Shown here: piece after piece, positions 24,151 through 26,113 of the stretch
How positions within the stretch are numbered: position 1 is the stretch's first letter
Layout of the letters: each line of letters opens with the position of its first letter
Program-made: the position numbers and the translations under genes
Assembly (NCBI RefSeq): GCF_963853765.1
Contig: NC_088859.1
Span: forward strand, 27,900,001-27,964,000
Length of the DNA: 64,000 nt
Direction: 5' to 3'
Source: Magallana gigas
Lineage: Eukaryota
Notes under the pieces: generated by a model
Seen by the model: the letters and a program-made list of their open reading frames with translations, nothing else
Told to the model about the DNA's origin: nothing
Databases searched by the model: none

Positions 24151-25404
24151 GTAAGTTGATTTTATTCATTTATTCATATTTTTCTTACAATTTAACACTT
24201 GAAATCTGATGGTGAGTAGGCATCACAACATTTTCCTCAGTACTTTAGAATATGTAAACCTTCATGTATAGATATTTATATGAGACATATACATTTTACT
24301 GGTTAGAAAAAGTCATTTTAGCATCGAAATTATCAATGCCTTGCAAACGTTTATTTAAATTACTGCTTTAAAGTCTTATTATGTCAGTTTTTTCCCCTCT
24401 TTGTGTCCTAGAAATGTAACTACCAACAAATGTAGCATGTGTATGAGTTTGGTTGCTGGCATTGAACAGTGATTGCCCAAGATATATGAGGTCTGCTAGA
24501 AACTTTACTATTTGTAATACTGTAGTAATATCTTTTTGGCACTCTCATCATTAATTTGAGTCTTGGTCATCATTGTTCATGGTAACATACCAGACATTTT
24601 CACCTCTAAATGCACAATGTATGTAGAAACCCATGACTTTGAATGGTGAATCCTCGCTACAAAAGGTATGATCTCCTCAAGATTAATCACACCAGATAAT
24701 GGTGAAAGAAGGTGATGGACTTGTAATTTCTAAAATAGTTTCTCGTTAATGTTTGTAAAAAATCCCTACTTTGGATTTTAATGTGTAGAGTTATCTCCCT
24801 TTGTTTTATGAGTACAGTTTTCATGAACCAAGGCTCCTTATGAATTAGGGTACATTTAAGTAATTTATCCAGTGTATATGTAATGAATGGACAAATAGAA
24901 TTCATTCTTAATTCTTCTAAATTGTTAGTTTTGTTTCAAAAGGCATTTTATGTCTATCCATATCAGCCCTGTGTACTCTGATTTAATCTACTTTGGTCAG
25001 CAAGTGCCATTTCCTGAAAATGTGTGAATGGTTCTATGTGATTATCTGCTTAATGTAAACGGATTAGCCACTGTATATTTATCAAAATACCTGATTTCTA
25101 TAGCAAACTTAATGCAGAATTTTTTAAATATTTTTTAAAGCTCATAGCATGTGATTAAATGTTTCATTTTTGGCATTTTCTGAAAAATTTAGCCATATTT
25201 GGGTTATTATTTTCAAAAATTTCCAAAAAATAGTTCCAGGTGTAAAAGAATTAAATCATCATTAGCATCATCATGTATACATGTTAGGTTAATGAATGTA
25301 ATAGATTAATGAAACTTTTGACAAGTAATAAATGTTAAATGTAGCTCTTGAAATTTGAATATTGTGTGTAAAATGCTAGATTTTGTATGTTATTTCAGCC
25401 TTCC

Positions 25405-25534
25405 GATTTACAGTCAAGTCGTACACAGACCAACTCGTATACAGGTCAACTCGTATACAAAATTTGTTCTCATCATCCACACACAGACCATAGGGTTGTA
25501 TACGAGTTGGTCTGTGTACGACTTGACCGGACAC
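25405..25534. mobile_element. 130-bp foldback element with 9-bp TSD (CAGCCTTCC), MULE-like, carrying a TRIM-gene fragment; present only in unit 2
   Basis: TSD copies are at 25396-25404 and 25535-25543, and the empty site at ~4722-4730 has one copy. There is a perfect 31-bp inverted repeat (25413-25443, 25497-25527). Confidence 0.9.
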
Positions 25535-26113
25535 CAGCCTTCCTGGACCAGATTTCAAAGGCCTATAACTCTGATGCAGAATACACAATTCCCGCCAAAT
25601 TTCACAGGGAGGTGTATTATGGGTATAAGTGTATACCTACCAAGTTTCATCAAAATCAAAGAAGAATTGTGTAATTATTAGGTCACATACCACTATTTTT
25701 ACCCCGTGCTCATTGACCAGGCAAGTAGTTCCATTCTAAAAATGTATGTATTATTTCAAAAATTCCTAGGGGTACTAAATGGTCGAATTTGGTTCCTTTT
25801 ATGGCATGGGTGGAAAGAAGGTTTAAAAAGAAATACAGGCAAGAAAAATTTTAGAAAAATTATCTTTACAGGCGCAATAGAAATGGTGTAAAGAGGCCAA
25901 TGTTTACACAAATTCCCAAGTGAAAGTGATTTTTTCATGGTAGGGGTTATTTTAGGGGCCATATCTCAGTCCCCTCTCGATTGATTTTCCTGTAGTTTGG
26001 ATATGTTGTTGGACTAGTGTCATTCTATAGGTATGCTGTATTTGAACTCATCTGAGCCGGTGGAATTTTTTATATGATTTATTTTTGTATAAAGGAATAA
26101 GAGGGAAAAATAA

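What the first reader, a model, noticed from the sequence alone, without database searches (positions are those of the whole stretch)
25396..25543. 130-bp foldback transposon has captured a fragment of a TRIM-like propeller gene (Pack-MULE-like)
Seen: the insertion is present only in unit 2, has a 9-bp TSD (CAGCCTTCC) and a perfect 31-bp inverted repeat. The 35-bp filler between the arms (25461-25495) reads CCC TAT GGT CTG TGT GTG GAT GAT GAG AAC AAA TT = [11 protein letters not shown] on the minus strand. It matches the last blade of TRIM copy A (8688-8722, [11 protein letters not shown]) at 30/35 nt, with a 26/27 core. It matches copy B less well, suggesting a third paralog as donor. The arms and the filler also share ACACAGACCA. 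Known: 9-bp TSDs typify Mutator-like elements, and plant Pack-MULEs capture gene fragments and can yield small RNAs. Inference: this is gene capture by template switching during gap repair. Plus-strand transcription through this intron would make a hairpin whose loop is antisense to the TRIM family.
Basis: partly seen in the sequence, partly recalled or inferred. Interest (0 to 1): 0.85.

Follow-up and report, generated by a model that had tools for sequence, protein, structure and literature searches.

The report
Truncated oyster MITE with gene-derived filler
A 131-bp stub of a small oyster DNA transposon carries, where its interior was lost, about 30 bases copied from a B-box/propeller (TRIM-like) gene family; this looks like an ordinary DNA-repair scar, not Pack-MULE-style gene capture.

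Summary
The sequence facts hold. There is a 31-nt perfect inverted repeat, an empty site in duplication unit 1, and a middle segment matching the last propeller blade of TRIM copy A at 30/35.

The interpretation needs correcting in four ways.
- The element is an internally deleted member of a young family of about 75 copies. Its arms (61 nt and 39 nt) are 100% identical to other members.
- The family's target-site duplication is 8 bp (29 of 36 copies, three of them with one mismatch), not 9. The ninth C is the element's own last base.
- Only 30-31 nt (25466-25496) are foreign. This 30-mer has 20 genomic matches with 3 or fewer mismatches, against 0 for a reversed control. All lie in full-length 578-aa B-box/propeller paralogs. 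None is exact; the best is 28/30.
- None of the other 35 sampled members carries host-gene sequence. Their private inserts are nested repeats.

Contigs from independent public runs contain the filler, and one contains the exact right junction. Other runs show the empty site, so the insertion is real and polymorphic.

Best reading: interrupted gap repair with a template switch ("filler DNA"), a known process. The Mutator assignment is not supported and the superfamily is unresolved. The small-RNA idea is untested.

The parts
25397..25404 (.). Left copy of the 8-bp target-site duplication AGCCTTCC
   Evidence: Empty site in unit 1. Family termini fix the element boundary.
25405..25465 (+). Native left arm: 61 nt starting GATTTACA, with two copies of the about 15-nt subterminal repeat
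   Evidence: 100% identical over 61 nt to many family members.
25466..25496 (+). Filler: 30 nt homologous to the last propeller blade of B-box/propeller paralogs (antisense to their mRNA), plus one extra T
   Evidence: Absent from every other family member. 20 genomic matches at 3 or fewer mismatches against 0 for the control. All matches lie inside full-length paralogs.
25497..25535 (+). Native right arm: 39 nt ending CGGACACC
   Evidence: 100% identical to family right ends.
25536..25543 (.). Right copy of the 8-bp target-site duplication AGCCTTCC
25413..25527 (.). Hairpin-capable span: 31-nt perfect inverted repeat (25413-25443 / 25497-25527) with 53 nt between the arms
4723..4730 (.). Unoccupied target site AGCCTTCC in duplication unit 1
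   Evidence: Flanks of units 1 and 2 are 98.0-98.5% identical.
8693..8722 (-). Segment of TRIM-like copy A homologous to the filler (27/30); encodes [10 protein letters not shown]
29489..29518 (-). Homologous segment of TRIM-like copy B (25/30)
8633..10369 (-). Copy A: intact 578-aa B-box + beta-propeller ORF; no RING domain detected
29429..31159 (-). Copy B: intact 576-aa B-box + beta-propeller ORF, 3.9 kb from the element

Best explanation
This is a 131-bp internally deleted copy of a young, non-autonomous cut-and-paste DNA transposon (MITE) family of this oyster genome. Full-length members are 0.35-1.2 kb, have about 130-nt terminal inverted regions studded with a 15-nt repeat, and make 8-bp target-site duplications. 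The copy sits in unit 2 of a roughly 20.8-kb tandem duplication and is absent from unit 1, so it inserted after the duplication.

Its whole interior has been replaced by about 30 nt copied from the last beta-propeller blade of a B-box/propeller (TRIM-like) paralog. The most likely mechanism (inferred, not shown) has four steps:
1. The element excised.
2. The gap was refilled from a copy on the sister chromatid or homologue.
3. Synthesis stalled after 61 nt on one side and 39 nt on the other.
4. One nascent end switched briefly to an ectopic template in the very large TRIM-like family, then joined the other end at 2-3 nt of microhomology.

This is the classical 'filler DNA' outcome of abortive gap repair. 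The donor was a paralog or allele not present in this assembly. By default the product is a neutral scar, and its hairpin is simply the transposon's own inverted ends.
For: - Family membership: 147 genomic hits to the 31-nt repeat at 2 or fewer mismatches, 90 of them exact, against 0 for the control.
- Arm identity: both arms are 100% identical to other members over 61 and 39 nt, and positions 62-92 match no member.
- Duplication length: perfect 8 bp in 26 of 36 elements, 8 bp with one mismatch in 3, and 9 bp in 3.
- Empty site in unit 1.
- Filler origin: 20 matches at 3 or fewer mismatches against 0 for the reversed control. All lie at the same codons of full-length paralogs that are 60-71% identical to copy A in protein.
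- The filler reads as an in-frame natural variant, [10 protein letters not shown]. It combines states seen in different paralogs.
- Left junction: the element's ...AATTT and the paralogs' ...GATT share TT immediately before GTTCTC.
- The element is unique. Only one full-length genomic match exists, and it is the only one of 36 sampled members with a private short filler.
- Read support: the filler-junction words occur in 4 runs from at least 3 studies. Run X3 has exact contigs over 25414-25526 and over the right junction 25507-25565. Runs X15 and X42 show the 139-nt skip, that is, the empty allele.
- Precedent: filler DNA occasionally matched to gene fragments in Ds-like elements, attributed to errors in repair after excision (PMC3260210).
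Against: - No exact donor exists in the assembly. The best paralogs are 28/30 and copy A is 27/30, although the arms show no divergence at all. The template must therefore be an unsampled paralog or allele, or the filler is a mosaic.
- Microhomology is minimal: 2 nt on the left, and an unexplained extra T on the right.
- Two histories cannot be told apart. The deletion may have happened in place, or the short form may have arisen elsewhere and transposed here.
- No autonomous partner was found, so the excision chemistry of this family is unknown.
Confidence: 0.75

Rival explanations
1. Pack-MULE-like gene capture by a Mutator-type element. The element would be one of a class that acquires host gene fragments, and its hairpin transcript would yield small RNAs antisense to the TRIM-like family.
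For: - The filler is gene-derived and lies antisense to the minus-strand TRIM genes.
- Full-length members have long terminal inverted regions of about 130 nt.
- 3 of 36 copies have 9-bp duplications.
- The predicted RNA hairpin is very stable.
- About 20 paralogs are within 3 mismatches of the 30-mer.
Against: - 8-bp duplications predominate.
- Only about 30 nt are captured, in a single copy.
- 35 other sampled members hold no host-gene DNA. Their private segments are nested high-copy repeats.
- No MURA-type or any other transposase partner was found.
- Rfam microRNA hits reach 40 bits or less against gathering scores of 70-101.
- No small-RNA data could be examined.
Confidence: 0.07
2. Mosaic filler. 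The template was the commonest paralog type, the 30-mer ...CCACACACACACTATAGGG that is present in 8 copies. The two differing bases were then overwritten by the element's own 10-mer ACACAGACCA, through a further template switch or mismatch correction in a foldback intermediate.
For: The filler differs from that 8-copy variant at exactly two positions, 21 and 24. Both fall inside the 10-mer that is identical to the left arm at 25423-25432.
Against: The state AGACCA also occurs naturally in the family, in copy A and in C7:25102666. An unsampled natural paralog therefore explains the same data with fewer steps. The argument is also post hoc.
Confidence: 0.12
3. Chance resemblance, a family-native interior, or an assembly artefact.
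For: The shared segment is only 30 nt and is rich in CA repeats.
Against: - 20 hits against 0 for the control, all at the same codons of one gene family.
- No other family member has the segment.
- Independent runs contain the filler and the right junction exactly.
Confidence: 0.02

Closest known systems
Filler DNA / templated insertions at internal-deletion junctions of non-autonomous cut-and-paste transposons. Examples: maize Ds and Ds-like elements; P-element internal deletions; abortive gap repair by synthesis-dependent strand annealing.
   Same: A foreign stretch sits exactly where two native ends meet. It was copied from elsewhere in the genome, here from a gene. The termini and target-site duplication are retained. 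Ds-like elements carry filler that is occasionally matched to gene fragments (PMC3260210).
   Different: This is a mollusc family of unknown superfamily. The filler is very short (30 nt) and comes from a multigene family of hundreds of members. No exact template is in the assembly.
Pack-MULEs (plant Mutator-like elements carrying gene fragments)
   Same: A non-autonomous terminal-inverted-repeat element contains host coding sequence. Full-length relatives have long terminal inverted regions.
   Different: The duplication is 8 bp rather than 9-11 bp. The captured piece is 30 nt rather than hundreds to thousands of bp with exon-intron structure. It is a single copy with no evidence of transposition after capture. 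No Mutator transposase partner was found, and the rest of the family carries no gene fragments.
MITE-derived hairpin RNA or microRNA loci
   Same: A short inverted-repeat element could fold into a long perfect stem if transcribed.
   Different: No Rfam family reaches its threshold. The gene-derived part would sit in the loop, not the stem. No small-RNA evidence is available.

Membership tests
MITE (non-autonomous TIR DNA transposon) | Terminal inverted repeats flanked by a target-site duplication, with a matching empty site | tested here: met
   31-nt perfect inverted repeat; 8-bp duplication; empty site in unit 1.
MITE (non-autonomous TIR DNA transposon) | Multi-copy family of short elements without coding capacity | tested here: met
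   147 repeat hits, about 75 elements of 131-2481 bp. No ORF of 100 aa or more in the long copies examined.
Mutator superfamily / Pack-MULE | Target-site duplication of 9 bp (9-11 bp) | tested here: not met
   8 bp in 29 of 36 copies, including 3 with one mismatch; 9 bp in 3 of 36. The window's apparent 9-mer includes the element's own terminal C.
Mutator superfamily / Pack-MULE | Long terminal inverted repeats (about 100 bp or more) | tested here: met
   Positions 9-138 of a 1158-bp member match its other end inverted at about 93%. This feature is not specific to Mutator.
Mutator superfamily / Pack-MULE | Autonomous partner encoding a MURA-type transposase | tested here: inconclusive
   No partner was found among copies extended to 10 kb, nor in the 2.75-kb copy.
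Mutator superfamily / Pack-MULE | Internal region made of substantial host gene fragments (hundreds of bp, often with introns), usually carried by mobile copies | tested here: not met
   30-31 nt only, in a unique copy. The other 35 members carry none.
hAT superfamily | 8-bp target-site duplication | tested here: met
hAT superfamily | Short terminal repeats beginning with the YARNG-type motif (from general knowledge of hAT elements) | tested here: not met
   The ends read GATTTACAG... and GGTGTCCGG... The outermost 8 nt of the two ends are not inverted copies of each other.
hAT superfamily | hAT transposase in an autonomous partner | tested here: inconclusive
   No partner identified.
Filler DNA from abortive gap repair / template switching | Foreign segment located exactly at the junction of two native, otherwise intact ends | tested here: met
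   Element positions 1-61 and 93-131 are 100% family sequence. Positions 62-92 are foreign.
Filler DNA from abortive gap repair / template switching | Identifiable template elsewhere in the genome | tested here: inconclusive
   The template family was identified, with 20 paralogs at 3 or fewer mismatches. No exact template exists; the best is 28/30.
Filler DNA from abortive gap repair / template switching | Microhomology at the switch points | tested here: inconclusive
   2 nt (TT) on the left. One unexplained T on the right. A 10-nt identity between the filler and the arm lies inside the filler, not at a junction.
Rfam microRNA precursor families | Score at or above the family's gathering threshold | tested here: not met
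   Best hit is mir-5014 at 39.6 bits against a gathering score of 101. Many unrelated hairpin models score similarly.

The most novel reading that the evidence does not exclude
In carrier animals the element is transcribed as part of a longer RNA, and its 31-bp perfect stem is processed. The roughly 30-nt segment antisense to the last propeller blade would then give rise to piRNA- or siRNA-like small RNAs able to pair with about 20 B-box/propeller paralogs (3 or fewer mismatches). A repair scar would thereby become a polymorphic trans-regulator of a rapidly evolving, probably immune-related gene family.
Probability: 0.03. Interest if true: 0.7.

Novelty: new member of a known kind. Interest (0 to 1): 0.22.

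Why it matters
It is a clean, datable example in a mollusc of how non-autonomous DNA transposons shrink and pick up foreign sequence during repair. It is also a segregating presence/absence marker inside a tandem array of fast-evolving B-box/propeller genes. It shows that an apparent 9-bp duplication and a gene-like insert are not enough to call a Mutator or Pack-MULE element: the family comparison changed both readings. As it stands it is a neutral scar of modest interest. It would matter more only if small RNAs from it were shown to act on the gene family.

Tried and rejected
**Search for the autonomous partner and superfamily**
- I extended eight copies that lacked a second end to 10 kb. 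Most were simply longer MITEs of 0.7-2.5 kb.
- Two copies had no second end. One had no ORF of 120 aa or more. The other had ORFs of 154 and 215 aa with no Pfam hit.
- The 2.48-kb copy is inflated by a nested 1.36-kb high-copy repeat.
- The 2.75-kb copy on C1 has no transposase-like ORF in its first 1.5 kb.
The superfamily therefore stays unresolved.

**Other members carrying host DNA**
- Only three of 36 elements have private segments: 513, 1097 and 1346 nt. All three are nested abundant repeats.

**Exact donor**
- None exists at 0-1 mismatch anywhere in the assembly.
- The window holds only copy A (3 mismatches) and copy B (5 mismatches).

**Other checks**
- Known RNA families: only sub-threshold generic hairpin hits.
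- Earlier notes of this scan: nothing by place or by words.
- Intron claim: a contig-derived upstream sequence adjoining 26127 is not in the window. The boundary at 26127/8 has no AG acceptor. Intron status was therefore not established.
- A contig in run X26 joins the filler-bearing element to the flank of another family copy on C6. I treat this as a k-mer graph chimera through the shared 39-nt arm, not as a second insertion.

Full report
**1. What is in the sequence**

- Arms 25413-25443 and 25497-25527 are a 31-nt perfect inverted repeat, and CAGCCTTCC occurs at 25396-25404 and 25535-25543.
- The 31-mer occurs nowhere else in the window.
- Unit 1 of the tandem duplication has the uninterrupted site at 4700-4756 with one copy of the 9-mer. 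Unit 2 therefore carries a clean 139-bp insertion.
- Flanks of units 1 and 2 are 98.0-98.5% identical over 3-3.5 kb on each side.
- The 35 nt at 25461-25495 match 8688-8722 in TRIM-like copy A at 30/35, with a 26/27 core. Copy B matches worse.
- As RNA the element would fold at -58.6 kcal/mol, z = -9.6.

**2. The element belongs to a family, and that changes two readings**

The window is G000:C7:27900001-27964000 in a 564-Mb, 29-contig genome. Public runs that hold the sequence are labelled as oyster samples.

The 31-nt repeat has 147 genomic hits at 2 or fewer mismatches, 90 of them exact, against 0 for a reversed control. That is roughly 75 elements, and the family is young. I collected 36 distinct members of 131-2481 bp. 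All begin GATTTACA-GTCAAGTCG... and end ...CGACTTGAC-CGGACACC. The outermost 8 nt of the two ends are not inverted copies of each other. Inside them lies an inverted region of about 130 nt carrying a 15-nt repeat (GTCAACTCGTATACA) every 40 nt or so.

First consequence: the family's right end always finishes in ...CACC, so the window's duplication is the 8-mer AGCCTTCC and the element is 25405-25535 (131 bp). Across the 36 members the duplication is:

| Duplication | Members |
|---|---|
| Perfect 8 bp | 26 |
| 8 bp with one mismatch | 3 |
| 9 bp | 3 |
| Degenerate | 4 |

Second consequence: the left arm is native through 25465 and the right arm from 25497. Both are 100% identical to other members, over 61 and 39 nt. 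Only 25466-25496 matches no family member.

The window's copy is the shortest member and the only full-length match to itself in the genome. Short derivatives of other types (410 bp; 436-447 bp) do exist in several copies, so deletion derivatives of this family can amplify.

**3. Origin of the filler**

The 30-mer GTTCTCATCATCCACACACAGACCATAGGG has 20 other genomic matches at 3 or fewer mismatches, against 0 for the reversed control. None has 0 or 1 mismatch.
- Every match lies at the same place near the 3' end of a full-length, intact paralog. These paralogs are 60-71% identical in protein to copy A over about 530 residues.
- Copies A and B are B-box plus beta-propeller proteins of 578 and 576 aa, with no RING domain detected.
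- The family is very large. The first look gave 2381 candidates. The 75 that were scored all match essentially the full length, and 73 of them have no internal stop. They cluster on C4 and C7 and include a local array just upstream of the window.
- Read on the minus strand, the filler is an in-frame, natural-looking variant ([10 protein letters not shown]). It combines states seen in different paralogs: 'PY' in the common type, 'GL' in copy A.

The direction of transfer is therefore gene family to element. The segment is conserved coding sequence in many old paralogs and is private to one element.

The donor is not copy A (27/30), not copy B (25/30), and not any assembled paralog (best 28/30). 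Because the arms show no divergence from the family, random decay of the filler is an unlikely cause of those differences. An unsampled paralog or allele is the simplest donor. This is plausible because the local ORFs turn over fast. Copies A and B differ by 8.5% in nucleotides and dS is 0.155, while their flanks differ by only 1.5-2%.

There is an alternative I cannot exclude. The filler may have been copied from the commonest paralog type, and its two differing bases, both inside ACACAGACCA, may have been overwritten by the identical 10-mer of the element's own arm.

**4. Mechanism (inferred)**

The anatomy is two intact ends, complete loss of the interior, and a short foreign stretch exactly at the junction. 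A TT overlap precedes GTTCTC on the left, and one stray T sits on the right.

This is the signature of interrupted gap repair after excision, with a template switch. It is the 'filler DNA' seen in deletion derivatives of cut-and-paste elements. [quoted passage not shown]

The data do not say whether the deletion arose in place, from a full-length copy at this site, or elsewhere followed by transposition.

**5. Is it Pack-MULE-like?**

No, on the features that could be tested.
- The duplication length does not fit Mutator.
- The 'capture' is 30 nt in a single copy.
- The other 35 members contain no host-gene DNA. The three members with private internal segments simply have nested high-copy repeats.
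- Long inverted ends are present but are not specific to Mutator.

No autonomous partner was found, and further retrieval was blocked. The superfamily is therefore unresolved. The 8-bp duplication fits hAT and several other superfamilies, but the termini do not look hAT-like.

**6. Reality and population status**

- The five sampled 31-mers spanning the filler and both junctions are all present in four runs from at least three studies. One of these may be the assembly's own source.
- In run X3, contigs cover 25414-25526 and the right junction 25507-25565 without a mismatch.
- In RNA runs X15 and X42, contigs and 14 raw reads skip exactly 25395 to 25535 (139 nt). They lie on a haplotype with about 3% differences from the window, and at position 25386 they differ from both units, which are identical to each other over 25374-25404.
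- Many runs that hold the flanks do not hold the filler words.

The insertion is therefore real and polymorphic.

**7. Transcription and the small-RNA idea**

Poly-A RNA reads cover the flanks at low depth in both orientations in X42, but those animals mostly lack the insertion. Partial phosphoglucomutase-like exons lie on the plus strand in every unit. An intronic location is therefore possible but not shown.

Rfam gives only sub-threshold generic hairpin hits. No small-RNA data could be examined. The regulatory reading remains speculation, at about 3%.

**8. Verdict**

The segment is gene-derived, it arose by a repair template switch, and the donor is a third paralog. The family assignment and the Pack-MULE analogy do not hold. 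It is a new instance of a known phenomenon, of modest interest.

Noticed in passing
window 8633-10369 and 29429-31159 versus their flanks: The two B-box/propeller ORFs differ far more than the surrounding duplicated DNA: 91.5% nucleotide identity and dS 0.155, against 98-98.5% in the flanks. dN/dS is about 0.9 in the propeller half and about 0.09 in the B-box part. This suggests gene conversion from other paralogs and/or diversifying change confined to the propeller.
   Followed up: partly
window 25680-26128: A roughly 449-bp segment behaves as a dispersed or tandem repeat in read data. Depth is very high in RNA contigs, many different sequences adjoin both of its ends, and three reads join 26128 back to 25676.
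   Followed up: no
window 1156, 21807, 41959 (GEESFG exon); 16514, 36378 (TASHNP exon); 44239, 45766: Phosphoglucomutase-like exons on the plus strand recur in each roughly 20-kb unit, but the last two exons occur only once. The tandem duplication therefore copied an internal part of that gene together with the TRIM-like gene. The protein identification rests on motifs recalled from memory.
   Followed up: partly
window 26114-26548 (+): A 144-aa ORF resembles a Tctex1-type dynein light chain (by eye; not tested against Pfam). Stranded RNA reads lie on one orientation only across it.
   Followed up: no
G000:C7:27854817-27931159, plus clusters on C4 36.6-47 Mb and C7 25-28 Mb: Very large expansion of intact 570-600-aa B-box/propeller genes. 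The first look gave 2381 candidates and 73 of the 75 scored have no internal stop. A local array of at least five copies includes A and B.
   Followed up: partly
L061/L065 (410 bp); L062-L064, L066, L067 (436-447 bp); L060 (355 bp): Short subfamilies of the same MITE share the termini but have different interiors, and each occurs in several copies. Deletion or replacement derivatives of this family have therefore amplified.
   Followed up: partly
run X26 contig over window 25408-25536; L010 (G000:C6:38894802-38895445): One public contig joins the filler-bearing element, with one SNP at 25438, to the flank of a different family copy on C6. This is probably a k-mer graph chimera through the shared 39-nt arm, but a second insertion of the short form is not formally excluded.
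   Followed up: no
L053:294-1639 of the element; L068 and L057 internal segments: Three abundant repeats of 1.35 kb, 1.1 kb and 0.51 kb (hundreds to thousands of first-look candidates) are nested inside long members of the MITE family.
   Followed up: partly
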